NCBI GenBank assembly: GCA_937625935.1
Contig: OW569345.1
Span: 1-64,000 of the forward strand
Origin: Tetramitus jugosus
Lineage: Eukaryota > Protista > Heterolobosea
DNA: 64,000 nucleotides
Reading direction: 5' to 3'
Positions 24,474 to 41,782 of this stretch are shown in pieces (the stretch's first letter is position 1; each line of letters starts with the position of its first letter). The translations under genes were made by a program, and so were the position numbers. The notes under the pieces were generated by a model. That model had not been told where the DNA came from, made no database searches, and was given only the letters and a program-made list of their open reading frames with translations.

Positions 24474-24814
24474 CTCAAATAAAGCGAATGTTCACGACGA
24501 ACGATTCTCTGTGCTTTTCACTGTGGCCCTCAAATTCGCGGAGCAACACAACATTTTCCCGAACGAATGTTCAACGAATTTGTGGAGCATTCATGTGAAA
24601 ACAGCAATTTTTCGATTGAACCAAAAATTTGTTGTTTCACACGAAAGCAAAGCTTCACACAAACAAAACACACCCCTACCCACTGTTTGAGAGAGACTTT
24701 TTTGTTGTTTGGAACACACATATCCTATCATCAATTTTTCATCTCACAACAATACTTTCCACCACCATCCCCCTCACTCATAAAACAACACAGTTTTTCA
24801 TTCTGAGAGAAAAC

Positions 24815-27800
24815 ATGAGTTCGACAACAAACAATATCAATGGAGCAGCAACAGTCTCCATCTCATACACTTACATCTTATCCACACTGGAGAGAGAAGG
24901 TCTACACAACAATAAGAAGCTTAAAACATTTTTGACTCAGGTCACTCAACAGGAACAAAAGGTAAATATTCTTGATGATGCAATAATAATAATGATGATG
25001 ATGATTCTTCTTTTGTTGGTTGCCTTTTGACTCACACAAGCAAAAATATTTTTTTTTTCAAATTCGTATTTTCTCTCTCACTCTTGTCGTGCACTGTGTA
25101 TTAGTCATCCACAATTGATGATTATTTATTGAATCAAGTTCACAACTTTTTGGCATCCTTGTTCATTGATGCCAACTTTACATATTTGATTGCTCGAGTG
25201 TGCAAAGCAATTCTTCCATTAGTCGTGTCTCAATTGGTTCATCAGTGTTTGGCGAGCACCGATCAAGATTTGCACGACAAGGTCACTTGTGCACTGAGTA
25301 AAATATTACCACTGTTTCCTCAATTTTTGCAGTTTGTGATTATGCATTTGAAGGGTAGACCATCACTGTTGGATCGCATCATTTCACAAAAGAATAGGGA
25401 TTCTCAATATTATTTGGAATTGATCAAGACTGCTCATCGCTTGTTGAATCACTCACCAGAAGAGTTTGCCAAAATGTGGAATTGGTCGCCCTTTTTTGCA
25501 CTGTTGGAACACCCAGAGGAACAAGTCAAGTGGTATGCCTCCAAGTGCGTGTCACTCTTGTTGCAACACGAGGGAGTAGAGGCTAACATGTTGGCCAACG
25601 CAAAATCATTCAACGAAAACACAAAATTTGCAATTGATTCCAACGAAGAAGAAGAATTGCACTTGAATCAATTTTTGGCCCTGTACTCACAGAGTAGTAC
25701 CGCTACTACGCCGTCACGGACACTGACCGGAGAGCCCATGGATATAGAATCATCATCTGTCGTTGATCATCATTCGACAACAAGAAAAGAATCGAATCTA
25801 ATGGTGGAGGTCTGCGGTGTCTGGCTCCCCAAAAAGATTGGCGCGTCCAACGAGAGCAAAATCTCTTCCAAACTCATATTTACTGAAACATCGATCGCCA
25901 ATACAAGAGCAGTCGCAATGGCTGTATCTCAGGGATCACCCGTACTACTCGAGGGAATTACAGGTGCCGGAAAGGTTTGTATTGGAAAACTCGAATATTT
26001 TGTTGTACTTGTTCCCATTCACATGTATACTAACTCATCATACTTTACCCATCTACGCATCACACAATGAATATTACAGACGGCCATTGTCGAAGAGTTG
26101 GCACACATGACTGGAAACACTGATTTGATCAAGGTGAATCTGGATGAATCGTTTGATAGCAAGGACTTGCTCGGTACATATGTTTGTACAGATGTTCCTG
26201 GAGAGTTCAAATGGCAACCAGGTGCGCTGACAAAGGCTGTGACTGAAGGTAGATGGATCCTTATTGAGGATCTTGATTTGGCACCATTCGATATTGTTTC
26301 TGCAATTATACCTCTGGTCGAATCAAACACTTTATTTATTCCCTCTCGTGATGAGGTCATACCTGCTTCTACCGGATTTCACTTGTTCGCAACTCAGAGT
26401 ATGGTAGAATCTTTCAATGGTTCTGCATCGAGACAGAGAGTTTTGGCAATGTCAAATTTGTGGAATCAGGTTCGAATCGAAAAGCTATCATCATCTGAAA
26501 TTGAGATTGTTCTGCAGACCAAGTTTCCTGCTATCGCTCATTTAACTCCAAATTTTTTGGATACGTATGAAACTTTGCGTGGCACGAAAGAAACGCTGCC
26601 TATTGATTCTGTGGGCGAAACAAATGAGATTATGGAAGAAGAGGAGAAGAACCGTTCCAAAGATTTTGCTCAGTTGCGAAGCTTTGGTCGTCTATTTTCA
26701 TTCAGAGATTTATTGAAGTGGTGTGAGAGAATCAATAGATTCTACGGACACAAGATTAATAAGGATTATCTCGTTAGTCAAATCAAGAAGGATATTTTCC
26801 ATGAAGCAGTTGACATATTTTGTGGCATGATTGTGAAGAAGAATGTTTATAATGCTGTTGTTCATACGATTGCCCATGTGTGGGGAATTACAGATTTTTC
26901 GCACTATCTAGAGCTATACAAACCTCAAGTAGTTGAGGGTGCCGGAAGCGTCACTGTAGGAAGAATCACCATGGGTAGAGACAAGAAGGGTCTCGCTGAG
27001 AATTTGGCCGATGTCAGAAAATTTGCCCATACAAAGGCGAGCTTGCGATTGATGGAACGGTGCGCTGCTTGTGTTCAAATGAAGGAGCCTGTTCTGCTGA
27101 CTGGTGAAACTGGTACGGGCAAAACTTCAATAGTACAACATTTAGCAACCTTGATTGGCAAGAAGCTTATTGTACATAATTTGAATCAACAAACAGATAG
27201 TGCTGATTTTATAGGAGGTTTCAAACCTGTTGACTTGCGCATTCTTGCTCTGTCGCTCAAGACTAATTTCGAGAAGCTCTTCTCTGTGACGTTTTCTGTG
27301 AAGCAGAATTCATCATTCCTTGTCAAGACCAAGGAACAATTCGAGAAGAGAAATTGGGCCTCACTTGTGATCTTGTTCCAAAAGGTTATCGAGAAAGCTT
27401 ATGAGAAGCTTGCAAAAGAAGAGGAGGACAATGAAGAAGAAGAAGTGAAAGATGTCCCTGTTAGCAAGAAGTCAAAGAAGAGAAAGAACAAGGCAGCAAG
27501 CGATGAACCATCCAAGAAGGTTCAAAAAACTGAAAGACAACGAACTCTGCGACAGTTCTGGGAGAAGTTTAGTGTTTCTGTTGAGAGATTTAACACACAA
27601 CAAAACTTGGTCAAGAATAGTTTTGCCTTCTCCTTTGTCGAAGGTACATTAGTGAAGGCATTGAAGGAAGGTCACTGGATTCTTCTAGATGAAATCAATT
27701 TGGCTTCGACTGAAACCTTGGAGAGATTGAGTAGTTTGTTGGATGGCGAAGAGGGTACCTTATTCATTACTGAAAAGGGTGACACTGAGCCAGTTAAGAG

Positions 27801-30800
27801 ACATCCTGAGTTTAGATTGTTTGCTTGTATGAATCCGCCAACGGATATCGGCAAGAAGAATTTGCCTCCTGCTATGCGTAATAGATTTACCGAGTTTTAT
27901 GTGAACGAGCTCACTGATGCTGATGATTTGAAGATTGTTGTCAGCAAGTATTTGGAGAAGCATCAGATTGCGAATCCCCCAACTGATGCAATTGTTTCTT
28001 TCTACTTGGAGGCAAAGGCACAATCGGAGGTTAATCTCTCTGATGGTGCAGGTCATAAGCCTCATTATAGTTTAAGAACTCTTTCACGGTCGCTGGAATA
28101 TGTGTCTGTTGTTCTGCCTATCTATGGTCTCGAACGAGCTCTGTACGAAGGTTTCTGCATGGGTTTCTTGACCTTATTGAGTAGATCATCATTTTCTGTG
28201 ATGGAAGAAATTATTAGAAAGTATCTATGTAAGAAGTCCAAGGAGAGCTTAGCTAGCGTACCTCGATGTCCTGGTGATGGATATGTTCAGTTTGAACACT
28301 TTTGGTTAAAGACTGGCCAATTTACCGTTCAAGATGACCCTTACTTTATCATCACACCTTCTGTACAAACTCATTTGAAGAATTTGGCAAGGGCATTGAA
28401 AACAAACAAGTATCCTATCTTGTTGCAAGGTCCAACATCAGCAGGTAAAACTAGTATGGTGAGCTATCTCGCTAAGCGTACCGGTCACAGATTTGTGAGA
28501 ATTAATAATCATGAGTCCACTGATTTGCAAGAATATTTCGGAACGTATATTACCAATTCAGATGGAAAACTTGTTTTCCAAGAAGGTATTCTTGTTGAGG
28601 CAGTGAGGAATGGATATTGGATCGTTCTTGATGAGTTGAATCTTGCTCCTTCAGATATTTTGGAAGCACTGAATAGACTTTTGGATGATAACAGAGAACT
28701 GTTTATTCCTGAAACTCAAGAGATTATCAAGCCTCACCCACACTTCCAATTATTTGCAACTCAAAATCCACCTGGATTATATGGAGGTAGAAAGGTGCTT
28801 TCAAGAGCCTTTAGAAATCGTTTCCTCGAATTCCATGTTGACGACATTCCTGGAGATGAGCTCAAGATTATTCTCCAAAGACGTTGCGGTATATCTGCTC
28901 GGTTAGCTGATAGAATGGTTAATGTGATGAAGAGTCTCCAAACTCATCGTCAGAGCAGCAAAATTTTTGCAGGAAAGGGAGGTTTTATTACGCCAAGAGA
29001 TTTGTTCAGATGGGCAGAACGTGTGACAACCTTGAATAATGCCTACAAGGAGAAACAAGAAATTGCTGAGGAAGGCTTCATGCTGTTGGCCGAGAGACTC
29101 AGACGAGACGACGAAAAGGTTATTGTCAAGGAAACCCTTGAGAAGTGCATGGGTGTCACATTAGACATTGACAAGATGTATGACTGTGAAGAGTCTGAAG
29201 AATTCAAGTCAATTCAAATGAATTCAGACGCCAAAATTGTTTGGACGAAAACAATGAGAAGACTTTTCACTTTGGTCGGCAAGTGCCTAAAGTACAAGGA
29301 GCCTGTGCTGCTTGTAGGTGAAACAGGTTGCGGAAAGACCACGATATGTCAAATCTACAGCGAAATTCTGAAGAATCATCTTCATATTTTGAATTGTCAC
29401 CAACATACAGAAACCAGTGACTTCTTGGGAAGTTTGCGTCCTGTTCGTGGACGTGACACCCTTCTGGTCAAAATCAAGAATCTCATCATTCAATTTGCAG
29501 AGGAATACAAGAAGATTATCAAGATTGATCTGGCCGTACCTGATATGACTGAAGATCTTGGCGATGCCATTAAATCTTTGGAGAAGGTGTGCAACAAGAT
29601 TGTGAAGAAAAGACAAGCTGAAGAGTCATCTGATGATGACTTTGCAGAGAGACCATTGCTCGAACTGCAGTTGAAGATTAGAACAATGTACCAAGAGTGG
29701 AAGTCTCTCTTTGTTTGGTACGACGGTCCTCTTGTCGAAGCAATGAAGAATGGAGACCTCTTTTTGATTGATGAAATTTCTTTGGCTGAGGACGCAGTTT
29801 TGGAAAGACTAAACTCAGTATTGGAACCATCTAGAGAACTCGTTTTGCCTGAAAAGGGATCTGAGAATATTGAGGAGATTAGTGCTGCTGAATCTTTCCG
29901 TGTTATGGCCACTATGAATCCTGGTGGCGACTTTGGTAAGAAGGAACTTTCTCCTGCACTTAGAAACAGATTTACCGAAATTTATGTTCCAACTCTGTCT
30001 GTCAAGGAGGATCTCGCTTTGATTATTGGCAACAGATTGTCCAAAAAGGTCATTCACTTCAATGTCAAGATGGTCGATTTTGTCAACTTTTTCAAGAGCA
30101 AGAAGTCCAAGAGAATACTCAGTATCAGAGATGTTATTTCTTGGATCGAGTTCTTGAACCTTGCAGTTGACAAGTTGAATTTGAATCCGTACGAATCTTA
30201 TGTTCACGGAGCTGAAGTCGTTATTCTAGAAGGTGTTGGTATAGGATCTGATATTCTAGAAAAGACCAGAATGAGCTTGAGAAGTGATTCTCTTCAGTTT
30301 TTGATTGGTCAGTTTGAGAATGAGACATCTGCTGATGAAATTGAACATTTGAAGAATCAATTCTTGAAGGAGAAGACTAGCTACTCTCTAAAGGCATCAA
30401 CCAATGAGAACACGTTTGGTTTCTATCCATTCTTTATTGATCATGGACCAACTTCCATTCCAAAATCACTGCACTATTCTTTGAACGCGCCAACGACCAG
30501 CAAGAATGTGATGAAGGTATTGAGAGCTCTTCAATTAAGAAAGCCATTGCTCTTGGAAGGCAGTCCAGGTGTTGGAAAGGTTTGTATTTCTTTCTTTGCG
30601 TTGAATGTTTTTGTACTTGTCCCATTTACTTCCATGTACTAACTCCACAATGACTATATAGACTTCGTTGATTCAAGCGATTGCAAAGGCTTCAGGTCAC
30701 AATGTCGTTCGTATTAATTTGAGTGAGCAAACAGATATGATGGACTTGCTGGGTAGTGATCTGCCAGTAGAAGGTGGCGCTGGTGGTCAATTCCGTTGGT

Positions 30801-33800
30801 CCGATGGTATCTTCCTATCTGCACTCAAGGCTGGTGATTGGGTCCTGCTCGATGAGTTGAATCTTGCTTCCCAATCTGTCCTCGAAGGTTTGAACTCTGT
30901 TCTCGATCACAGAGCAGAGATTTATATTCCCGAGTTGAACAGAACCTTTTCATGTCCAAAGTCCTTCCGTATCTTTGGTGCTCAAAATCCATTGCAGCAA
31001 GGTGGAGGTAGAAAGGGTTTGCCAAAATCTTTCCTGAATCGTTTCACACAAGTATATGTTGAACAAATGCAGTCTGAAGATTTACTGTTCATCGCCATGA
31101 TGATGTATGGTGATATTGGTGAGGACAATCTTCGTAAAATGATTAACTTTAATGAGTTAATGTATGAAGACTCCATGATCAATTACAAGTTTGCACGCAA
31201 GGGCAGTCCTTGGGAGTTTAATCTCCGTGATGTGTTCCGATGGTGTGAATTGCTGTTGAGTGAAAACATGAAATCAGGCAAGTATGATCCTTCCAGGTTT
31301 GTTGATTGTGTGTACAGACAAAGAATGAGAACCGAAGAAGATCGCCTATATATTTCCAAGCTCTATGAGAAGGTGTTTGGCGAAGCGTATGTATGTGATG
31401 TGAATCCATCCTACACAATCACCCCACATTCAGTCCAAATTGGCCAATCTGAAGTATCAACCAATGCTTCCCTCTCTGAGAACGATAAGAACAACCATGC
31501 AACCATTAGCGGCAATATTTCGTACAATTTGTTGCACTCTTTCTTGAATCCATTGGAGAATATTCTAAAGTGCATCCAAATGAACTACATGTGCATTTTA
31601 ACTGGAAATTCGGGTTCAGGAAAAACTTCTTTGATTCGATTGGCTGCCCAGATGACTGGCAATGTATTGAATGAGTTCTCAATGAGCAGCTCTACGGACA
31701 CAGTCGAGTTACTCGGAACATTTGAGCAAGTTGATCCTTTGCAGAAGCAGAGACATGTTGCTATGAGAGCAAAAACCAAGCTTGATGACTTGGCACGTTC
31801 ATTGTGTACAAACAATAAGGCTGTTGATCGAATTCAGCAATTGTACAATGATTGGGCGACACTTGAAGAAACCTTGAAATCTCCTGCCACTACCAGAGAT
31901 GACAGATTAAGAACACTGGAATTAGTTAGAACTGTCGTTAGATCCATTTATGAATCTGCAGACGAACTTGAGCAATCCGCTGAGAGCGAGCTTGATCATT
32001 GCATTTCCGAGTTGAATCAAGTTGAGAAACTCATCAATGATGGTGTGAAGGGCAGATTTGCTTGGAATGATGGCACTCTGATTCGTTCGATGGAAGCTGG
32101 CCATTGGATCTTGATCGATAATGTCAACTTCTGTAATCCAACGGTATTGGATCGTTTGAACGGCTTACTAGAACCAAATGGAGTTCTGGTGGTTAACGAG
32201 AGAGGTTTGGTTGATGGTGAAATCAAGGTGGTCAAACCACATCATCACTTCCGTATCTTCATGGTCATGGATCCAAAATATGGAGAGATTTCAAGAGCAA
32301 TGCGTAACAGAGGTATTGAAATATCTATTGTTCCAACCAGGATTCCCTCACAGGACGCATTTACTCTACTCTCGAGCGTGGGTATTCAATCTCCATTGGT
32401 CATTAACAAGATTATGACTCTCCACAATGAATTCTTGGACAAGGTAAGAACAACTGAGGAAGATCGCCCAACATTGCGAGATCTGATTCGTTGTGCTGAA
32501 ATCTTCTTGGCGGAAGCTAGTCGAGGATTACCGATTGAGCAGGCATTGATTGTTTCGATCGACAGCACTTACATCAGGAACAAGTGTTTGCAACCACACC
32601 AAAAGGAGATGGCTGTCTTGTTGTCATCCACAATTGTTGCCAACGACAATTTATCCATGGACGAGTCAATCTTGCCCTCCGCATTCCTGAGTCAAAATAG
32701 TTTTTGCGTGAATAATGCCGAGTACAGGTCAGTATTGCGCCAAGGTGCTCTGTTGTACTACACTGCAAAGAAATTGTTAGCATTGAAGCTTCAGAATCAA
32801 CTTCAAGGCAAACAGAAGATTTCTCTTGCATCTGTTGCTGCTAACTTGAATTGGCCATCATTGATAACTGAATTACCATCCAGTTTTGTTCACAAGTTGG
32901 TCGATCCATCAATCAATTCTATTGATGTTGATGCCGAATTCGTGAAGAGTGCAGTGTCAACAATGATCAGTCAGTTTGGGCATGCTGCCGAATTCTTTGT
33001 TTCGAGAACACCAGTTGATCTTGCTCCACTGCGCATGATTTGGCTTGACCGCCTCATGTACCTGTGTCAAGGAGAGCCAGATTTAACTAGGATTATTGAA
33101 AAGACAAAGTTCATGATCACTAAGAGGTCAGACAGTCGATTGGCCAAGGATATCAGTAAGCGATTGACAAAGTCAGTGCTTCCAAATATCAATGAACAAG
33201 CCCTAATTGATGTGCTCGCCCAACAACCATTGGATTTGAGACTCAACAAACAATTATATCAGAAACTCAAATACTCTGGATTATATGGAACCTTGAGTGA
33301 TTCTCTATTCGATAGAGTTTCCATGCTTACCAAGGTTATATCGAGAAAGTATGAAGAGGATATGATTTATAACAATTCGACAGACTCCTTAATTAGAAAG
33401 AGCAAGAACTACAACTCTCAGAAGAAGAAAGGAAAGTTATCTGACACTGATCTAGTGCAATTTTTGTTCCCATTAATTCAAGCAGCGGACCAACTCATCG
33501 ATTCGATCATCAATGACGATCAAGAGCAAATAATGCTCGAATCAGTTGAGAGTCTCTTCCAGACCAGAATACGCATCTGGCAATACTTGGCAAATTCAAC
33601 AGTACTTACTGAAGAGTTCCTGATTTATTGGCACTGGTTCGAAAAGAGCTTGGCGGCAATGTCTATGGACAAGTGCTCCAATAAGAGTACAATCAACTTC
33701 TACAACCACTTAAGTAACATCATGTTGGAAGTGAATGAGAGATGCACAAAGTTGTTTGACTCTCTTTCTCGAAAGAATTACTTGTGGAAGTATGGAGGTC

Positions 33801-36800
33801 ATCCAAAGAACCTGAGTTCGACTGAGTTGATTATGTTGAAGAATGATATTGAAACATTCATCCACACCCATGACATTGATAACAAACCTGATATTAAGGT
33901 TATGTTGGTTAAGGCCGTATGTACCATCAACTGGTTGAACGAACAGAAGAATAGCAATGCTGCACAGCTTGGAAATTCTTTGTCCGATTTGATGGCCACA
34001 CTTGAGTCTACCTACAAGTTGAAGGAAAATCGTGAGGCCTCGCATTTGAGAGAGCAAAAAGAATTCGAACTCGAAGAAATCTTCGATTTTATCTTCAACA
34101 ACTGTAACGAAGACGACGATGAAGATAGAGTAAGAAGCAGTTCATTGTCAAAGCATACAACCAAGGAATTGTTGCCACTGTACGAGTACAACAGTGTTGC
34201 TGAAGAAACATCAATTTTGGCAATGATCACTCATTTCATTGTTCAATTGAGAAAGAGACAACTCTTCACGGATATTCCATCATTTAATAACTCTGTGCGT
34301 GAACTACTGGCCAAGATCAAAAACTTGATTTCCTACGTGTTTGAAAAGACACCAAGAAATCCTCTGGACATGGCGCCATATCAAACATTTGTTTGGACAC
34401 TTGAGAGCATTAACATCAATAAGCAATCTTCTTCTCACGAGATTGACGAAGTATATGTCAAATTAGCTCCACTCCACGCAGTTCTGCATGACATGTGGGC
34501 TAAATGGAATGCCAGACTATGGGATAATGGTTATAACAGAGTCGAGCAGTTCGAGTCGAATACCGATGGAGCCACACCAGAACAACTTGAGGGCCCTAAT
34601 CGTCTCTTCCAAGACATTAATTCTGTTAGAATCTTGTCAATTTTGCGTGATTGGCAATCAGTGCCTATCAGAGCAAGGTATACGAAGATCGATCAATTGA
34701 AGCATATTGTCGACTTTATGTGTACTTCTACAGACCAAGAGGATATTAGTAACTCAGATTGGATTCATGTCATCAATACCTTCACTGATACCCTTCTCTG
34801 CTTTAAGAAGTCATTCAGTAATGATGATGCTCTGAAGTTGGAGAATACTTTGAACGAAATTTTGACCTGCTCCTCCCTTGTTGAAACATTGGGATCACTG
34901 ATAAGCAATTCCTCTGATTCTCGCTTGAGAGCTAACATGAACACAGTTGTCGAAATTGCCAAGTTACTAGAGTTAAGACATGACATTAGTCAAAACCAGA
35001 ACGTATTAAGAGCTAGAATCTGGGTTCTCGTTGGTGTTTTGCGTCTCAAATTGGTAATTCCTGCTCAATCCTTGGATCCTGCTAGAAAATATTCAGTTGC
35101 CATTGATTTGTTGACACCAGATTATGAAGAAGTTACGGCAAAGATCGATATGTTCACCAGAATAGAGCGATTTATTACTGGATCGAGCATGAATCTTGAT
35201 ACCGAGAAAATGAACATACAACTAGCAACACTGAAAGAAGCCATCGATCGTATCGAGGATAAGGTTGTTGTGCGACCTGTAACACAACCTTTCAAGATGT
35301 TGTACAAGGATATGAAGGACTTTGTCGATGCTCTTGTCACAAGCAAGATTGATACTTTGCTAAAGCCAATTCTTTCACTCCCTGAGCACGATGATCCAAC
35401 CAATCTGGTTACTGACGTGCTTGTTAAGGAAGATATGATTCAAAACAATATGTCCTCTGTGACCCGAAATCTACTCAACAGCTACAGCTCCTACACGGAT
35501 GTTCTTGTTCCATTTACTACCTCTGTTTACCAGATCAAGTATGGCTTGAGATTATTGAGTTATTTCGGAACTCTTGAACATAGCGAGGTCGAATCAAATC
35601 AGATTAGCACAATTACCAGAGACATTGTGCGATTCCCTTCATCTAATGATTTATCCATGCTCCAAGCAAACCTGAGTATCGTTAACACAGCATTGACTCT
35701 TGGATTGAGAAGCTCTCGCAAATACGAACGATATCAAACATTGATTGAAGTTGTCAGAGTTCTAATGGACAAAATACATCTGCATGCAATGCATCATCAA
35801 TACGTGAGTCGCGAAGTACTTGCATCGATAGATTTGGTGTTCTCTGCTTATTCAGCTCTGTTCAAACTCATTGACGATGAAACAAAACAATATGAAAAAG
35901 AACAGGACGAACTCTACAAGTACAAGGAACAGACAACGGTGATCGAGACAGACGAAGATATTTTGGCAAAAGAAATTGAACAAATGTTCCCAACATACCT
36001 AGATCACTATGACCAATTTTTGAAGAAAGACGAGACTTCTTCTGTGGTTGCACCAGAGAAACCTGACAATAAGGAGTTGAAGAAGTTGAACCAAGTTCTC
36101 TATGATGCCCAAGAAATCATTCGACTTGTTAATATCCATCGAGAAGTATATACTAAGATATCACAGGCCGATAGAAACGACAATAAGGCTGACTTGAACT
36201 CGATCCGTACTCAATTGTTCACTGATTCCATGAAGGTGGCAGGAAAGTTGATCTCAAGCACAAATGCTAGCTCCAGCATGAGTGAGTCTGGTCTTCTGCC
36301 TTTCATTCTATATGGTAGTCAAGCAATTTCTGAGATGACTGAGAAACTGAACATTCAAGCAAAACCAGCCGATGTCTCAGTGTTCGACATCTACTCCGAC
36401 TCGAATATTCCTGAAGTCAGCTTGGCATTTAACACCCTGCTCCCAATGGTGCAACGATTCAATGAATTGTTGAAGAAGTACGAAAAGCATCCTACTCTCG
36501 TACAAATGACAAACATTTGCGAAAGAATTCTTGATTTGTCTGTCTCTACACCAATCATCAAGGTTCTTACCGGATTGGAAGTTTTGTTAATGAAGGCCAA
36601 TGAGTGGCAAGAGTATCTTACCTCGCCTGCTGGATCCATCAAAGAACAGATCCTGAAGCTTACTACTCTCATCATCAGATGGAGAAAGATGGAACTGGAC
36701 AATTGGAGAAGTGTGCTTGTGTCAAAGCGCAAGGAAACTAGAACAAAAGCAGTGAAGTGGTGGTTCAGATTCTATAGAATGATTAACATGAGTTCTTACA

Positions 36801-39800
36801 CTAATCCGGACGAACTCCCAAGTGACGAAGAGTTGCAAAAAGCAGCAACCTCATTCTTGGCAATTTGTGAAGACTACATTAGAACTGCTTCTGTTGGAGA
36901 GTTTACCGATAGATTGGAACTGCTTCCTAACTTCTTTATTCAACTGACAGCTGAAATTGAGTCTCAATTTACTACCACATCGCTTCCTGTATCGTTGAAG
37001 CAAAAGTTTTTGAATATTCTTTTCAACATGCATCGATTCTATGCACAATTCAAGAATGCAATTGAGAATCAGATCGAAAATGATGTCAAACCAATTGAAG
37101 AAAAGCTAAAGAACTTTGTTAAGCTGATGAAATGGGAAGATGTCAATGTTGACGGTTTGCGCCAATCAACAAGCAAGAGCAGAAGACAATTAGGAAAATT
37201 CAGCAAAGGATTCAATGAAATTCTTGTGAAGCCAGCCAGAGACATATGGGATAAGTATGATCCTCAGGCAGTTGCTGCTGTGGCTGAAAAAGACTCTGCA
37301 ACTGCGAAACGCAAAAAGAACAAGAATAAGAAAAAGAAGCGCGTCAGAAAGAACAAGAAGGTGGAAGAAGTAGTTGTGCCTGCATTGTCGGACGAGTTGG
37401 AAAAGTTAGCAACAGTGTTCAGAACGAAATCTGTGGAAGAAGCCGCTCAAGTGGGAACCTACCTGCTGCAAGGACAAAAATCCTTGAATCTGAAGGAAGA
37501 TGATCTCATTTCTGGTGAAAAGCTCGCCATGGTTGATTCTAAGATTGAACACAACCTGACCAAGTACGTTCTTCAAAACCACAAGGTTATGAACGAGTGT
37601 GATATGACCATTGACCATCTCGAAGACCTAAGTACGACCGTTATCAATCGTATGAAAGATTTGCAAAAACCTGGAGCGCTAACAATGATTAAGAAGAGAG
37701 CGCTCAATGACCTATTGAAAGAATTGAAAACAATCGGTATCAGCTCCCTTATCGCTAAGGTCAAGCAACAGACAACCACCCAATTAATATTTGAGCAATC
37801 AAGGGTAGCCCTAAACCAATCTTCAAAATGTCAAGAGACAGAAGCTCTGTGGTTAAAGTCTGACGATTATTATTACAAGAGCATCTACGGTTTGCAACAC
37901 TTGCGTCATACTTATGATACTGAACCATCCGAAGATTTGAATGATAAGGAAAAGAGACAAATGGTTGGATTCAGTGAGAATCTGTTCCACTATGCAATGA
38001 AACAGCGTGCAGCTCTTGCCGCTCTCCAGACTGAACAGAACCAACTTGGCGTCTCTATTGGAGTATTCAATGATTTAAGAAATGCTGCCAACCAAACTAA
38101 TCTGATGAAGACTTCAGTTTTGCCGCCTCAGCGCTACGCTAAGCAATGGCTTGTGAAACAACAAGATTTCTTCAGTCGTTTTGCGGAACTATTGAGCGAA
38201 TTAAGCATTCTCTTCCAGAATCTTACAACATCCTCAATAGAAAGAAGCTCAGCTGCTAAGACATTAGGCACTCTTCATGATCTCATCATTACGAAGAAGA
38301 AGGTGTTGGATGAAGTGAGTGTTGAACGCGCAGAAACAATCTTCACGTCGGTGCATCTGTCCATGATTAGTAATAACTTCTCACAAATGCCAGACATTCA
38401 GAATCTTGTGACACAACTTGAAACAGAATCACCTGAAATTGTTGGACGTTGCAAAGATCTTCGATCTCTTGTCGAAGAAGGATCAAAACTAGCTGTCGAA
38501 TTCGCTCAAACACCAAAGGAACAGTCCACAAAGAAGATTGATTTGGCTGACAAGTTTAAACAAACATGTGCTGATCTTGTGACGAGCATTCAACTTTCCG
38601 CCCAGCGATTGATCAAACAATTCCAAACTGAAGAAGAAACCCTTGATGAAATTGTAGCAAACAAGGATCCAGAAGAGAATGTCAATGAAGATGGAGACGG
38701 CGAGTCACTATTCTTAAACGAATACAAAGAAAACAGTGTAGCAAGACTCAACACTCTATTCGAGTCATCATTCAACGTCTTAAGCAAAGGCCTGCGTGAT
38801 GTGAATCAAAAGATTGCTCAACTTCACTCCCTATTGGAACAAGCAAGTAATCAACCAGACACCGCAAAGCAGAGACAAATCAACAATTCTATTGTCATTA
38901 TAATTGGCAGAATTCAACCAATTATGAGAAAACTGCAGGACAAAATTGACTTGTTCAAGTATCCATTCCTCAGCTTCCATAAGGCAATCACCAAACTTGA
39001 GTTTATTTTGCTCTCCATCTTCTGTACTCTATTCAGAGAGGGCTTTTGTGCGACTGAAGAAGGTGAGGGTGAAGGTGAAGGTAAATCTGGCCAGATTGAT
39101 TTCTCTCAAGGTACTGGTATGGATGAAGGTGAAGGTATTAACGATGTAACAGACCAAATCGAAAATGAAGATCAAATCATGGATGCTAAGGATCTTCAAA
39201 AGGAAGATCAGCCCAAGAAGCAACCAAAGGAGAATGATGATGCAGTCGAAGTAGAGACTGACTTCGAATCCAAACTCGAAGATGTTGATCAACAAGAGAA
39301 AGAAGACAACGAAGAGGAAGAGGAAGAAGAAGACGACGAAATGGACAAAGATATGGGCGAAATTGATGACAACGATCCAAACAAGGAAACTCTAGATAAG
39401 AAACTTTGGGATGAGAATGACGAAGACGATAATGATGACCGAGAGGATGAGAACAATGATGGATCAAATGCCAATGAAAAGCAAGAAACTGAACTGCAAG
39501 CAAAGGAAGAAGAAAGAGAAGGTCCTGAAGACTCGAAGCAGAAGAAGGAACCTCCACAAGTTGACACCAACCAAGAAAACGAGGAGGTTGAACAAGAGGA
39601 ATACCAAGATATTGTGTCCGAAGATCAGATGAGAGATGAAAACGAAGAGAAGGAAGATGAAGGTCAACCTGAAGACAAAGAATTTGAACTACCATCACAA
39701 ATGGATCTTGATGAAGGTGATGAGGGTGACGACGATTCTGACGATGGTGAGCAAGAAGAAAATGACTCAGAGGAAGAAGGTGAAAACGCTGACCAAGCTC

Positions 39801-41782
39801 CTGATGCTCTACCCGCTCATCGTGAGGAAGATGTCGAGGAAATCGAAACAGAAGATGCAGTGAATGAAGAAAACGTTCAACAGGATGACATCATGGAAGA
39901 TGAAAATAACGACGACAATCAACCGGGTCTTGACCCTTCCACCAATGATGAAACAAATCAAACAAAGGAAGAAGAGGAAGAAGATGAAAAGATGGGTGAT
40001 GATGAAGAGGAAGAGGAGAAAGATAATCCTCGTGTCGACACAGAAGAAGAAGAAGCTTTCCAAGAGGACTTGAAAGAAACACCATTCGGAGTGCAGCACA
40101 CTGCAGGCAAGGCTTCAGAGATCAAGGATGACGAACCTGAAGAAGAGCGAGAAGAAAAGAAGAACAATCAAGCAGAAGAAGAGAGTGGTAAAGACACAAA
40201 CAAATCTGAGTCTGGAGAGAGTTTCGATCAAGGAAGCGACAATAAGAAGGAAAAGAAGGAGAATAAGTCTGATGCGGCTCAATTCGATCCAAACCCATAC
40301 CGAAGTTTGGGAGATGCCCTGAAAGAATGGAAGGAGAAGCTCAACATGGTGGACAAGAAGGAAGACAGCGAAGAAAATGGAAATGACAACCAAAACGAAG
40401 AGGATGACTTTGAATTTGCTGACAAGGATCAAGAACAAAAGGAAAATGATATGCAAGTCTTAGCTCCAGCTACTCAAGAACAAGCTGATGCCTTCCCTGA
40501 ACTTGAAAATCGTGATGACGACAATGAGAGCAGCGATGACGAGTCAGAACAGTCCAAGGATATAAAGAATAAGGATCAAATGAGCGACAGTGAAGACGAG
40601 GCAGACGAGCAAAACAGCAAGAACTCTGGAAAGGCCGTCATGAGATTTGAACAAAAGAATAATGAAGATGAGGACGATGAGATGAACGATGAGGAGATGG
40701 TCGATGCTGAGCCTGAAATTAAAAAAGAATTCAACGTTGAAGAAGGTGAAAAGAAGCCAAGCTCAATTCATGTTTCAACAGGCCAACACGCCGAACAAGA
40801 TTTGGAAGTTGAACTCGATTCAATTGCAGAGGAACAGAATCTGTCCATGGAGGACATTCAGAAGATGAGAGAAGAATTGGATATCATGTTGAGTGAATGG
40901 AGAAACGACCAGGACAAGGTCGAAAAGAGCAAGGACGCTTGGAAACGTTTCGACATGATCACAAATCATCTATCTCAAGAACTGTGTGAACAATTGCGCT
41001 TAATCCTCGAGCCTACTCTGGCAACAAAACTCAAGGGTGACTACAAGACTGGTAAACGAATTAACATGAAGAAGGTCATCCCATATATTGCCAGTCAGTT
41101 CAGAAAGGATAAGATTTGGCTCAGAAGAACCAAACCAAACAAGAGACAATATCAGGTGTTGTTAGCTATCGATGACTCAAAGTCCATGGGTGACAATCAT
41201 GCCGGTCAAATGGCATGCGAAGCTGTTACTCTGATCAGCAAGGCCATGTCTCAACTCGAGGTTGGTCAACTTGCTGTTGTAAGCTTTGGTGAGAAAGTTA
41301 ATCTCCTTCATCCATTCGATCGTCCATTCTCTGATGAAGCAGGTTCTGAACTATTGGCTCAGTTCACATTCAACCAGAATCAGACTCAGATTTACAAATT
41401 CATGCAGGATGCAGTATCGATGCTTGATGCCTACAAGTCATTCGAACTTGTCAACAATACTGAGCAAGTTCAACTAGCATTCATTATCTCTGATGGTCGA
41501 ATGCTCGACAGAGAAAGTATTGTCAAGATGGTTAGACAAGCACAAGAAAAGAGACAATTGTTCGTTTTCATTCTGATTGACAATCCAAATCCAAAGGACT
41601 CAATTCTTGAACTGAAATCTGTCTCTTATCCTAATGGAAAGCTCACTGTGACATCCTACATTGATCAATTCCCATTCCCATACTACATTATCCTGAGAGA
41701 CATTCAATCTTTGCCTGAGATTCTTGCTGATGCCCTGAGACAATTCTTTGAACTGTTGGCAGTCCAGAATGATCAAGAGTAA
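24815..41782 (+). CDS. MDN1: Midasin (Rea1) AAA ATPase, about 5545 aa, 4 exons
   Basis: Exons 24815-24961, 25105-25974, 26080-30579 and 30662-41782, all with phase-0 GT-AG introns. Six AAA modules: GITGAGKT, GETGTGKT, GPTSAGKT, GETGCGKT, GSPGVGKT, GNSGSGKT. Long linker, D/E-rich tail and C-terminal MIDAS/vWA (IDDSKSM, ISDG). Confidence 0.97.
25975..26079 (+). other. Spliceosomal intron in the midasin AAA1 Walker A (GK|T)
   Basis: GTTTGT donor, TACTAAC at 26028-26034, CAG acceptor; removal restores GAGKT. Confidence 0.9.
30580..30661 (+). other. Spliceosomal intron in the midasin AAA5 Walker A (GK|T), similar in sequence to the intron at 25975-26079
   Basis: GTTTGT donor, TACTAAC at 30637-30643, TAG acceptor; removal restores GVGKT. 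Confidence 0.9.

What the first reader, a model, noticed from the sequence alone, without database searches (positions are those of the whole stretch)
25975..30661. Twin homologous introns at the identical Walker A codon of midasin AAA1 and AAA5
Seen: both introns interrupt CAGGTGYYGGAAAG|AC (G-K|T, phase 0). They share ordered blocks well beyond splice consensus: GTTTGTATT; GAATRTTTT; TTGTACTTGT(T)CCCATT (26003-26019 and 30611-30626); CATG(TA)TACTAACTC; CACAATGA.TAT..AG. No other intron I could define in the window carries these blocks. AAA4 has an empty GGAAAG|AC site (29332-29339). Known: the six midasin AAA modules diverged before the eukaryotic radiation, so neutral introns would not stay alignable. 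Inference: either recent intron gain by copying (introner-like element with a target preference, reverse splicing, or conversion between paralogous domains), or a conserved intronic RNA element.
Basis: partly seen in the sequence, partly recalled or inferred. Interest (0 to 1): 0.8.

Follow-up and report, generated by a model that had tools for sequence, protein, structure and literature searches.

The report
Intron family aimed at P-loop codons
The two look-alike midasin introns are two of at least 32 related short introns that this soil amoeba carries at one exact spot, between the lysine and threonine/serine codons of the ATP-binding Walker A motif, in many unrelated ATPase genes, so new introns here were aimed at a conserved coding motif.

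Summary
Introns at 25975-26079 and 30580-30661 are spliced in four RNA data sets. Both split G-K|T of midasin AAA1 and AAA5 in phase 0, and they share blocks found nowhere else in the window.

They are not a private pair. A sequence-only model built from the introns alone finds at least 34 matches in the 26-Mb genome. I could inspect the flanks of 32, and every one lies in phase 0 after the Walker A lysine (GxxGxGK|T/S). Hosts include ABC transporters, classical AAA proteins, Lon, FtsH, RFC, ClpB, MCM, SF1 helicases and a PilT-like ATPase.

The family tree is star-like. The AAA1 intron is closest to an ABC-transporter intron, not to the AAA5 intron. Heterolobosean relatives lack the AAA1 and Lon P-loop introns, so these are lineage-specific gains.

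The only two supported sister pairs have identical exon flanks of 14 and 20 nt in unrelated genes. In midasin AAA1 a Ser-to-Ala change matches the putative donor. This points to template-directed copying between P-loop coding segments. The mechanism is inferred, not shown.

Other first-stage notes on this genome had flagged Walker A introns. None that I saw had been followed up or reports the family. I found no paper describing motif-targeted spliceosomal introns.

The parts
25975..26079 (+). Intron A: 105-nt GT-AG intron, phase 0, in the Walker A motif of midasin AAA1. Member of the P-loop intron family.
   Evidence: Skipped exactly in 4 RNA runs. Family model scores 54.5 bits (R1) and 51.3 bits (R2). 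Nearest relative is the ABC-gene intron at C4:464689.
30580..30661 (+). Intron B: 82-nt GT-AG intron, phase 0, in the Walker A motif of midasin AAA5. A shorter member of the same family; most of the 3' part is deleted.
   Evidence: Skipped exactly in 4 RNA runs. Family model scores 35.5 and 32 bits.
26003..26019 (+). Central conserved block of intron A (TTGTACTTGTTCCCATT). It forms part of the family core: a T-run, then GTACTTGT, then CCCATTCAC.
   Evidence: Exact match only here and at 30611-30626 in the whole genome. Unchanged in the second strain L035.
30611..30626 (+). Central conserved block of intron B (TTGTACTTGTCCCATT).
25954..25974 (+). Exon codons G-I-T-G-A-G-K of the AAA1 Walker A, ending in GGAAAG. 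The Thr codon follows at 26080-26082. The 14 nt CAGGTGCCGGAAAG are identical to the flank of the sister intron in an ABC gene.
   Evidence: Seven other heterolobosean midasins have Ser or Ser-Ser where this one has Ala.
30559..30579 (+). Exon codons G-S-P-G-V-G-K of the AAA5 Walker A, ending in GGAAAG. The Thr codon follows at 30662-30664.
29317..29340 (+). AAA4 Walker A (GETGCGKT) with an unoccupied GGAAAG|ACC site.
27103..27126 (+). AAA2 Walker A. Unoccupied; the Lys codon is AAA.
28429..28452 (+). AAA3 Walker A. Unoccupied; the Lys codon is AAA.
31604..31627 (+). AAA6 Walker A (GNSGSGKT). Unoccupied; the Lys codon is AAA.
25129..41782 (+). Midasin (MDN1/Rea1) gene body. Exon pieces are 25129-25974, 26080-30579 and 30662-41782. 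Upstream exon(s) before 25129 were not resolved.
   Evidence: ORF list. Homologs are midasins of Willaertia, Naegleria and others.

Best explanation
Shown: introns A and B are two members of one family of homologous short (66-111 nt) spliceosomal introns. The genome holds at least 34 matches. In all 32 whose flanks I could read, the intron sits in sense orientation and phase 0 directly after the Walker A lysine codon (GxxGxGK|T/S). The hosts are anciently unrelated P-loop NTPase genes.

Shown: the other introns of the window do not belong to the family, and no non-intron copy was found.

Shown for two genes: heterolobosean relatives lack the intron at the orthologous P-loop (midasin AAA1 and Lon). 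These are therefore gains in this lineage.

Inferred: the family spread in an old, star-like burst. Pairwise divergence is 20-45%, against about 5% between two strains. The spread was by copying that is aimed at P-loop coding sequence.

Inferred, my preferred mechanism (about 0.45): template-directed ectopic repair or gene conversion between P-loop coding segments. The short conserved nucleotide motif (..GGN NNN GGA AAG|A..) would supply the homology, and the intron would be carried along with a few flanking exon bases. Under this reading intron A was copied from the ABC-transporter gene at C4:464689, not from intron B. What makes the breaks is unknown; a P-loop-specific nuclease is possible.
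For: Family and target. The pattern AAGGTNTGTAT..TACTAACTC gives 9 hits against 0 in the control, and all 9 lie at GK|T/S. The intron-only model R1 gives 27 real hits, and all 27 lie at GK|T/S; the 3 other top hits are (GTT)n low complexity. Model R2 gives 34 hits at E<=0.003. Five of its 7 new hits are independently shown to follow GxGK codons. Host families were identified by Pfam. 26 of the 27 introns need splicing to keep the reading frame.

Not generic. A window scan with filters off finds only A and B.

Gain. AAA1 is uninterrupted in L037, P0243, P0002 and P0008. Lon is uninterrupted in L079, L080, L081 and others. This organism is sister to the Naegleria/Willaertia clade.

Copying with flanks. 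The intron tree is a star with only two supported pairs: C6-ABCG with C21-ABCD (99/99) and C4-ABC with MDN1-AAA1 (86/86). Both pairs are among the 3 of 351 member pairs with at least 14 nt of identical 5' exon flank (chance estimate about 5e-5, post hoc). AAA1 has Ala (GCC) like the ABC flank, where seven other heterolobosean midasins have Ser.

Site preference. The Lys codon is AAG in 27 of 27 occupied sites against 4 of 10 empty P-loops (P=9e-5). The preceding Gly codon is GGA in 19 of 27, against 10 of 54 for the other Gly codons of the same motifs (P=1e-5). Base +1 is always A.
Against: Across all pairs there is no correlation between intron similarity and flank similarity (Mantel r=-0.11, P=0.89; r=-0.007, P=0.53). 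A homology requirement is therefore visible only in the two youngest pairs. Most members share no more than GGAAAG with one another, which is very little homology for conversion. The flank-identity statistic is post hoc. A weak 7-nt terminal inverted match in the consensus (P about 0.017) would fit a transposon origin. No nuclease or break source was identified. Only 150 of about 18,000 first-look candidates were scored per model search, so diverged non-P-loop copies could have been missed. Splicing was checked with RNA only for A and B.
Confidence: 0.75

Rival explanations
1. The family is a site-specific mobile element, an introner in the strict sense. A dedicated enzyme (transposase, integrase, or a retro-element or RNA-guided nuclease) recognises the asymmetric P-loop coding sequence. 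It inserts a roughly 100-nt non-autonomous element in one orientation.
For: The phylogeny is star-like, as from a master copy. There is no overall link between intron and flank similarity. Position and orientation are strict. Nucleotide preferences GGA AAG|A go beyond what the protein needs. The consensus has a 7-nt terminal inverted match, TTTGTAT/ATACAAA.
Against: There is no locus-specific target-site duplication: within-locus matches equal the between-locus expectation. The inverted match is weak (P about 0.017) and overlaps the splice-site consensus. No intergenic, antisense or longer autonomous copy appears among the model hits. The two youngest pairs have identical exon flanks, which an insertion enzyme does not predict.
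Confidence: 0.2
2. The spread was by spliceosomal reverse splicing. Excised lariats re-entered other mRNAs at AAG|A junctions, were reverse-transcribed, and recombined into the genome.
For: All copies are sense-oriented and exact, with no duplication. AAG|A is a proto-splice-like site.
Against: AAG|A sites are very numerous, yet every inspected copy is in a P-loop. Exon-intron duplexes are no better than with shuffled introns (mean z=+0.66). An excised intron carries no exon sequence, so identical donor-like flanks in the sister pairs are unexpected.
Confidence: 0.1
3. This is the first reader's twin model: intron A is a direct intragenic copy of intron B (or the reverse), and only the midasin gene is involved.
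For: Same gene, same codon context, shared blocks. A distant relative (L034) also has an intron at the AAA5 K|T site, which could make B the older copy.
Against: At least 30 further members exist in other genes. B ranks 13th of 26 for A, and A groups with an ABC-gene intron. The L034 intron does not match the family model.
Confidence: 0.03
4. The P-loop introns are ancient and independently inherited. Their likeness comes from concerted evolution among introns, or from selection for a shared functional RNA or splicing element.
For: Between two strains, all 9 differences in A and B fall outside the central block. The T-run, CATTCAC and the branch region are the best-kept columns. Another heterolobosean has an intron at the same AAA5 site, and an unrelated eukaryote has introns within 5 nt of both midasin sites.
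Against: Relatives lack the AAA1 and Lon introns. There is no consensus structure and no Rfam match. ABC, AAA+, SF1 and MCM P-loops diverged before introns existed, so identical positions still require targeted gain.
Confidence: 0.05

Closest known systems
Introners and introner-like elements (Micromonas, Aureococcus, dinoflagellates, Dothideomycete fungi; PMC9860276, PMC4457414)
   Same: Many sequence-similar short spliceosomal introns at non-orthologous positions in one genome. They were gained in one lineage, carry their own splice signals, and are about 100 nt long like the fungal elements.
   Different: Known introners insert widely. Their reported biases are toward linker DNA, GC-rich genes or short target duplications (PMC9860276). 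This family is confined to one codon boundary of one protein motif. It shows no locus-specific duplication and no non-genic copies. No heterolobosean or Discoba case is mentioned in that survey.
P-loop-homing inteins of Anaeramoeba (PMC10710043)
   Same: A selfish intervening element that spread within one genome among the Walker A motifs of non-homologous proteins, apparently by non-allelic homing on microhomology. That paper also reports spliceosomal introns at or near intein sites in paralogs, and proposes intron gain as a barrier to homing.
   Different: Those elements are protein-splicing inteins with homing endonucleases. Here the elements are roughly 100-nt spliceosomal introns with no ORF. 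This genome showed only one intein, in a class II ribonucleotide reductase-like gene and not in a P-loop.
Intron copying between repeats of one gene (earlier finding s1-550883 in this genome; Oikopleura same-gene intron propagation, from my memory)
   Same: A pre-existing intron is copied into the equivalent codon of a similar coding segment.
   Different: In those cases donor and target are recent repeats, or lie within one gene. Here donor and target share only the P-loop motif and sit in unrelated genes on different contigs.
Group I and group II intron homing
   Same: Site-specific, orientation-specific, exact insertion into a conserved coding site without duplication.
   Different: No ribozyme structure and no intron ORF. 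The introns have GT-AG ends and a TACTAAC branch site, and are spliced by the spliceosome.

Membership tests
Introner / introner-like element | Multiple sequence-similar introns at non-orthologous positions within one genome | tested here: met
   27 aligned members plus 7 more model hits, in at least 10 kinds of P-loop gene.
Introner / introner-like element | Lineage-specific gain (absent at the orthologous site in relatives) | tested here: met
   Midasin AAA1 and the Lon P-loop are uninterrupted in several heterolobosean or closest available relatives. The other 30 sites were not tested.
Introner / introner-like element | Transposon hallmarks: locus-specific target-site duplication and/or terminal inverted repeats | tested here: inconclusive
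   No locus-specific duplication at positions -3 to -6. A 7-nt inverted terminal match in the consensus is reached by 331 of 20,000 random 3' ends.
Introner / introner-like element | Copies outside introns or an autonomous parent element | tested here: not met
   No non-intron copy among the model hits; the non-P-loop hits are (GTT)n repeats. The search scored only 150 candidates, so this is a weak negative.
Intragenic intron duplicate (twin introns) | The two introns are each other's closest relatives | tested here: not met
   B ranks 13th of 26 for A. A pairs with the C4 ABC-gene intron at 86/86 support.
Homing element spread by ectopic conversion | Co-transfer or identity of exon sequence flanking related copies | tested here: inconclusive
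   Met in the only two supported sister pairs (14 nt and 15+5 nt identical) and by the AAA1 Ser-to-Ala change. Not met across all pairs.
Homing element spread by ectopic conversion | A nuclease that cuts the empty site | not tested
Only a Pfam intein scan was run; it found one LAGLIDADG-type intein in a ribonucleotide reductase-like gene.
Structured intronic RNA (snoRNA, ribozyme, riboswitch-like) | Conserved secondary structure or a match to a known RNA family | tested here: not met
   RNAalifold predicts 0 pairs on 27 members. Rfam gives no match at E<=1 over 25800-30800.
Spliceosomal intron | Removed from mRNA at GT..AG with a branch-site motif | tested here: met
   A and B are skipped exactly in 4 RNA runs. 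All members have GT..AG ends and a CTRAC branch motif. Other members are inferred from reading-frame continuity only.

The most novel reading that the evidence does not exclude
The family is a spliceosomal 'homing intron'. A nuclease specific for P-loop coding DNA (for example an intein-borne or viral homing endonuclease, or an RNA-guided transposon nuclease whose guide matches the P-loop) cut empty Walker A sites across the genome. Repair from an intron-bearing P-loop copied the intron in. The copied intron destroys the cut site, so the introns would be both the product of the attack and the immunity to it.
Probability: 0.2. Interest if true: 0.95.

Novelty: new variant of a known kind. Interest (0 to 1): 0.87.

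Why it matters
How new spliceosomal introns arise, and why the same positions are hit repeatedly, are long-standing open questions. Known introners insert broadly.

Here one natural intron family shows essentially complete specificity for a single codon boundary of the most widespread protein motif in biology, across gene families that share nothing else.

This has three consequences. Parallel intron gain at 'conserved' positions can be driven by mechanism, which affects how shared intron positions are used as evidence of ancestry. Short coding-motif homology may suffice to move an intron between unrelated genes. And it provides a tractable set of occupied and empty sites, including three GGAAAG|AC sites in one gene of which two are filled, for testing intron-gain mechanisms experimentally.

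The parallel with P-loop-homing inteins hints at a link between homing nucleases and intron gain.

Tried and rejected
1. BLAST of each intron against its own genome found only the query itself. The family is too diverged and indel-rich for that approach. It came out only with a gapped pattern and with profile models.

2. Chance or generic intron features: rejected.

3. Exon-intron guide pairing, like group II EBS/IBS: duplex energies are no better than with shuffled introns.

4. Structured RNA or a known RNA family: none found.

5. Intein remnant. The genome's only clear intein is in a ribonucleotide reductase-like gene. By my own inspection the family consensus has no reading frame that ends in an intein-like junction.

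6. The intron of relative L034 at the same AAA5 site as a family member: no model match.

7. A metagenome scan for the family pattern gave 0 hits.

8. A larger background intron set and an occupancy count of empty P-loops genome-wide could not be done. My pattern was mis-designed and returned only the interrupted form.

9. Midasins of Naegleria and Willaertia (over 5000 aa) could not be fetched as DNA.

10. Exons were never joined. All protein searches, family scans and trees were run exon by exon, by reference.
Full report
**1. The observation**

- The sequence is as described. Intron A is 25975-26079 (105 nt) and intron B is 30580-30661 (82 nt).
- Each follows ...GGAAAG and precedes AC. Removing them restores GITGAGK|T (AAA1) and GSPGVGK|T (AAA5) in phase 0.
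- The ORF map shows that the midasin body has no other interruption over more than 16 kb.
- Contigs of four RNA runs, from separate studies, skip exactly 105 and 82 nt with GT..AG ends. Both are therefore real, spliced introns.
- The shared 16/17-nt block occurs exactly only at these two places in the 26.35-Mb genome.
- With the 5' splice site and branch region stripped, the interior local alignment is reached by 7 of 20,000 dinucleotide shuffles. It beats every other pair among 18 candidate introns.
- The empty AAA4 site is real.

**2. The organism and its relatives**

- The midasin exons were searched separately and never joined. They place the genome in Heterolobosea, as sister to a Willaertia/Naegleria clade.
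- Earlier notes of this scan call the organism Tetramitus jugosus. I did not verify the name.
- A second strain or very close relative (L035) is 99.2% identical over 17 kb. It has both introns, with 5 changes in 105 nt of A and 3 changes plus a 2-nt deletion in 82 nt of B. All changes lie outside the central block.
- AAA1 is uninterrupted in L037, in P0243, and in the single-ORF midasins P0002 and P0008.
- The AAA5 site is uninterrupted in P0002 and P0008.
- A more distant heterolobosean (L034) does have an intron at exactly the AAA5 K|T boundary. That intron does not match the family model.
- L036 has introns 5 nt upstream and 5 nt downstream of the two sites. The tree shows it is not a heterolobosean.

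**3. The turn: a family, not a pair**

- BLAST of each intron found only itself.
- A gapped pattern joining the extended 5' splice site to the extended branch site found three more places. All three are also preceded by GGAAAG.
- Relaxing the pattern gave nine places, against 0 in the control. All nine are phase-0 introns between K and T/S of a Walker A motif in different genes.
- A sequence-only covariance model built from the nine introns, with no exon bases, was searched against the genome. Of the 30 best places, 27 are introns and 3 are (GTT)n low complexity.
- All 27 sit in sense orientation and phase 0 directly after GxxGxGK.
- A second model built from the 27 found 34 places at E<=0.003.
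- Five of the seven new places are shown by independent pattern lists to follow G-x-G-K codons. That makes 32 verified places.
- These are lower bounds, because only 150 of about 18,000 first-look candidates were scored.
- PPGTGK followed by GTNNGT alone occurs 20 times, against 0 in the control.
- GGNNNNGGNAAG followed by GTNNGT occurs 71 times, against 29 in the control.

**4. The hosts**

Pfam scans of the downstream exons give:
- ABC_tran: six
- classical AAA (proteasome Rpt-like, Vps4-like and others): eight
- FtsH: two
- RFC: two
- SF1 helicases (AAA_11/AAA_12): two
- Lon, ClpB/Hsp104 and MCM: one each
- a PilT/T2SSE-type ATPase: one
- one protein without a Pfam hit

With the two midasin sites this makes 27.

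- The downstream exon starts at the same profile position in each family: position 12 of PF00004 in every match, and position 25 or 26 of PF00005 in five of the six ABC_tran matches.
- 26 of the 27 introns contain an in-frame stop or have a length that is not a multiple of 3. The one exception would insert 22 residues into the motif.

**5. Not a generic intron feature**

With filters off, the 27-member model hits only A (51 bits) and B (32 bits) in the 64-kb window. The next hit scores 6.9 bits. None of the other candidate introns of the window scores above background.

**6. Shape and age of the family**

- Members are homologous along their whole length. From 5' to 3' they share an extended 5' site, a GAAT-type box, a T-run, GTACTTGT, CCCATTCAC, an extended branch site, a CA-rich stretch, and an AATGAATACAAAAG-type end. 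The shorter members have deletions.
- Pairwise distances run from 0.20 upward, with a mean of 0.36. That is about ten times the between-strain intron divergence after Jukes-Cantor correction.
- The tree is a star.
- A's best partner is the ABC-gene intron at C4:464689. B ranks 13th of 26 for A. The two midasin introns are therefore co-members of the family, not twins.

**7. What the target looks like**

- The Lys codon is AAG in 27 of 27 occupied sites. It is AAG in only 4 of 10 uninterrupted GxxxxGK[TS] matches (not all of them bona fide P-loops) in the sequence I hold (P=9e-5).
- The preceding Gly codon is GGA in 19 of 27. The other Gly codons of the same motifs are GGA in 10 of 54 (P=1e-5).
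- The base after the intron is always A, because Thr is ACN and Ser is always AGY.
- Within midasin, the three sites reading GGAAAG|AC are AAA1, AAA4 and AAA5, and two of them are occupied. AAA2, AAA3 and AAA6 use AAA for Lys and are empty.

**8. Mechanism**

- Selection alone cannot place more than 30 copies on one codon boundary. Either the insertion or the copying must be aimed.
- Exon-intron pairing is not the guide (mean z=+0.66).
- Transposon hallmarks are weak. There is no locus-specific duplication, and the 7-nt terminal inverted match in the consensus has P of about 0.017.
- No intergenic or antisense copies were seen.
- The most telling result concerns the only two supported sister pairs in the intron tree. 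They are two of the three member pairs, out of 351, with at least 14 nt of identical 5' exon flank. The genes are anciently different: 15+5 nt for an ABCG-type gene and an ABCD-type gene, and 14 nt for an ABC gene and midasin AAA1.
- Midasin AAA1 here reads G-A-G-K with the same GCC codon as that ABC gene. Seven other heterolobosean midasins read G-S-G-K or G-S-S-K.
- This is what co-conversion of a few exon bases with the intron would leave. It is not expected from reverse splicing or from a transposase.
- Against it, there is no such correlation over all pairs. That could mean older flanks have since diverged. It could also mean the main burst used another route.
- I therefore prefer template-directed ectopic repair between P-loop coding segments (about 0.45). 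A dedicated site-specific element comes next (about 0.2-0.25), then reverse splicing (about 0.1).

**9. Comparison with the literature**

- The large introner survey reports no heterolobosean case and no motif-level targeting. Its reported biases concern nucleosome linkers, GC content and short duplications (PMC9860276).
- The nearest parallel is at the protein level. In Anaeramoeba, inteins spread among the Walker A motifs of non-homologous proteins. Spliceosomal introns occur at or near intein sites in paralogs, and the authors propose intron gain as a barrier to homing (PMC10710043).
- This genome has one LAGLIDADG-type intein, in a class II ribonucleotide reductase-like gene and not in a P-loop. 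So intein and endonuclease elements have been present in this lineage. The link to the intron family is speculation.
- Full-text searches combining intron gain, P-loop/Walker A, introner, Heterolobosea and Tetramitus found no description of such a family.

**10. Earlier notes of this scan**

- Several first-stage readers of other windows of this genome noted introns inside Walker A motifs. None that I saw had a follow-up or named a family.
- Some of their places coincide with my hits: C2 near 462.8 kb, and both halves of an ABCF gene on C41.
- A followed-up finding (s1-550883) reports intron copying between repeats of another gene of this genome.

**11. Limits**

- Splicing was verified with RNA only for A and B.
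- The census is capped, and occupancy of empty sites was sampled from only 10 cases.
- Absence in relatives was tested for two genes only.
- The organisms behind L034, L037, L079-L081, P0002 and P0008 are unnamed.
- The flank-identity statistic is post hoc.

Noticed in passing
L034:4064-4167 (Logan SRR32315873, a distant heterolobosean): Its midasin has an intron at exactly the same AAA5 K|T phase-0 boundary. The intron sequence does not match the family model. It is the only interruption in the 16-kb contig. This suggests either recurrent targeting of P-loops in another lineage or a very old, fully diverged copy.
   Followed up: partly
L036:9886-9941 and L036:14267-14319 (ENA ERZ25074310; not a heterolobosean): The only two introns in more than 14 kb of this midasin lie 5 nt upstream of the AAA1 K|T boundary (inside the Gly codon) and 5 nt downstream of the AAA5 K|T boundary (inside the Ser codon). 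P-loop-proximal introns may be a wider phenomenon.
   Followed up: no
L077:112-3669 (G000:C17, intein match at C17:499579-500589): A class II ribonucleotide reductase-like ORF of 1185 aa carries an intein with LAGLIDADG-like motifs. The Pfam Intein_splicing match is above the curated cut-off.
   Followed up: partly
L078:1375-2103 (G000:C12): A small Hint-domain protein (CFPGDS... start of the module) gives a weak Intein_splicing match. It is probably a hedgehog-type Hint protein and not an intein.
   Followed up: no
L076 (G000:C11, intron ending at 239198, minus strand): A bacterial-type PilT/T2SSE (PF00437) ATPase gene in this eukaryote carries a family intron in its Walker A. A gene of likely bacterial origin has therefore been invaded.
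   Followed up: no
L053:1501-1566:- (G000:C6:646263-646328): This family member is 66 nt long, a multiple of 3, and free of stops. Retention would insert 22 residues into the Walker A motif of an ABCG-type transporter.
   Followed up: no
window 25975-26079 and 30580-30661 compared with L035: All 9 strain differences in the two introns avoid the central T-run/GTACTTGT/CCCATT block. One difference changes the branch motif of intron B from TACTAAC to TACTGAC. The block may be needed for splicing.
   Followed up: partly
G000:C53 and C55 (five places listed): The identical string GGCAAAGGAAAGGTGGGT recurs five times on two small contigs. This is probably a repeat unrelated to P-loops.
   Followed up: no
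window 25017-25128: There is probably a further midasin intron between the ORF pieces 24629-25030 and 25129-25974. L037 has an ORF break at the corresponding place. It does not match the family model.
   Followed up: no
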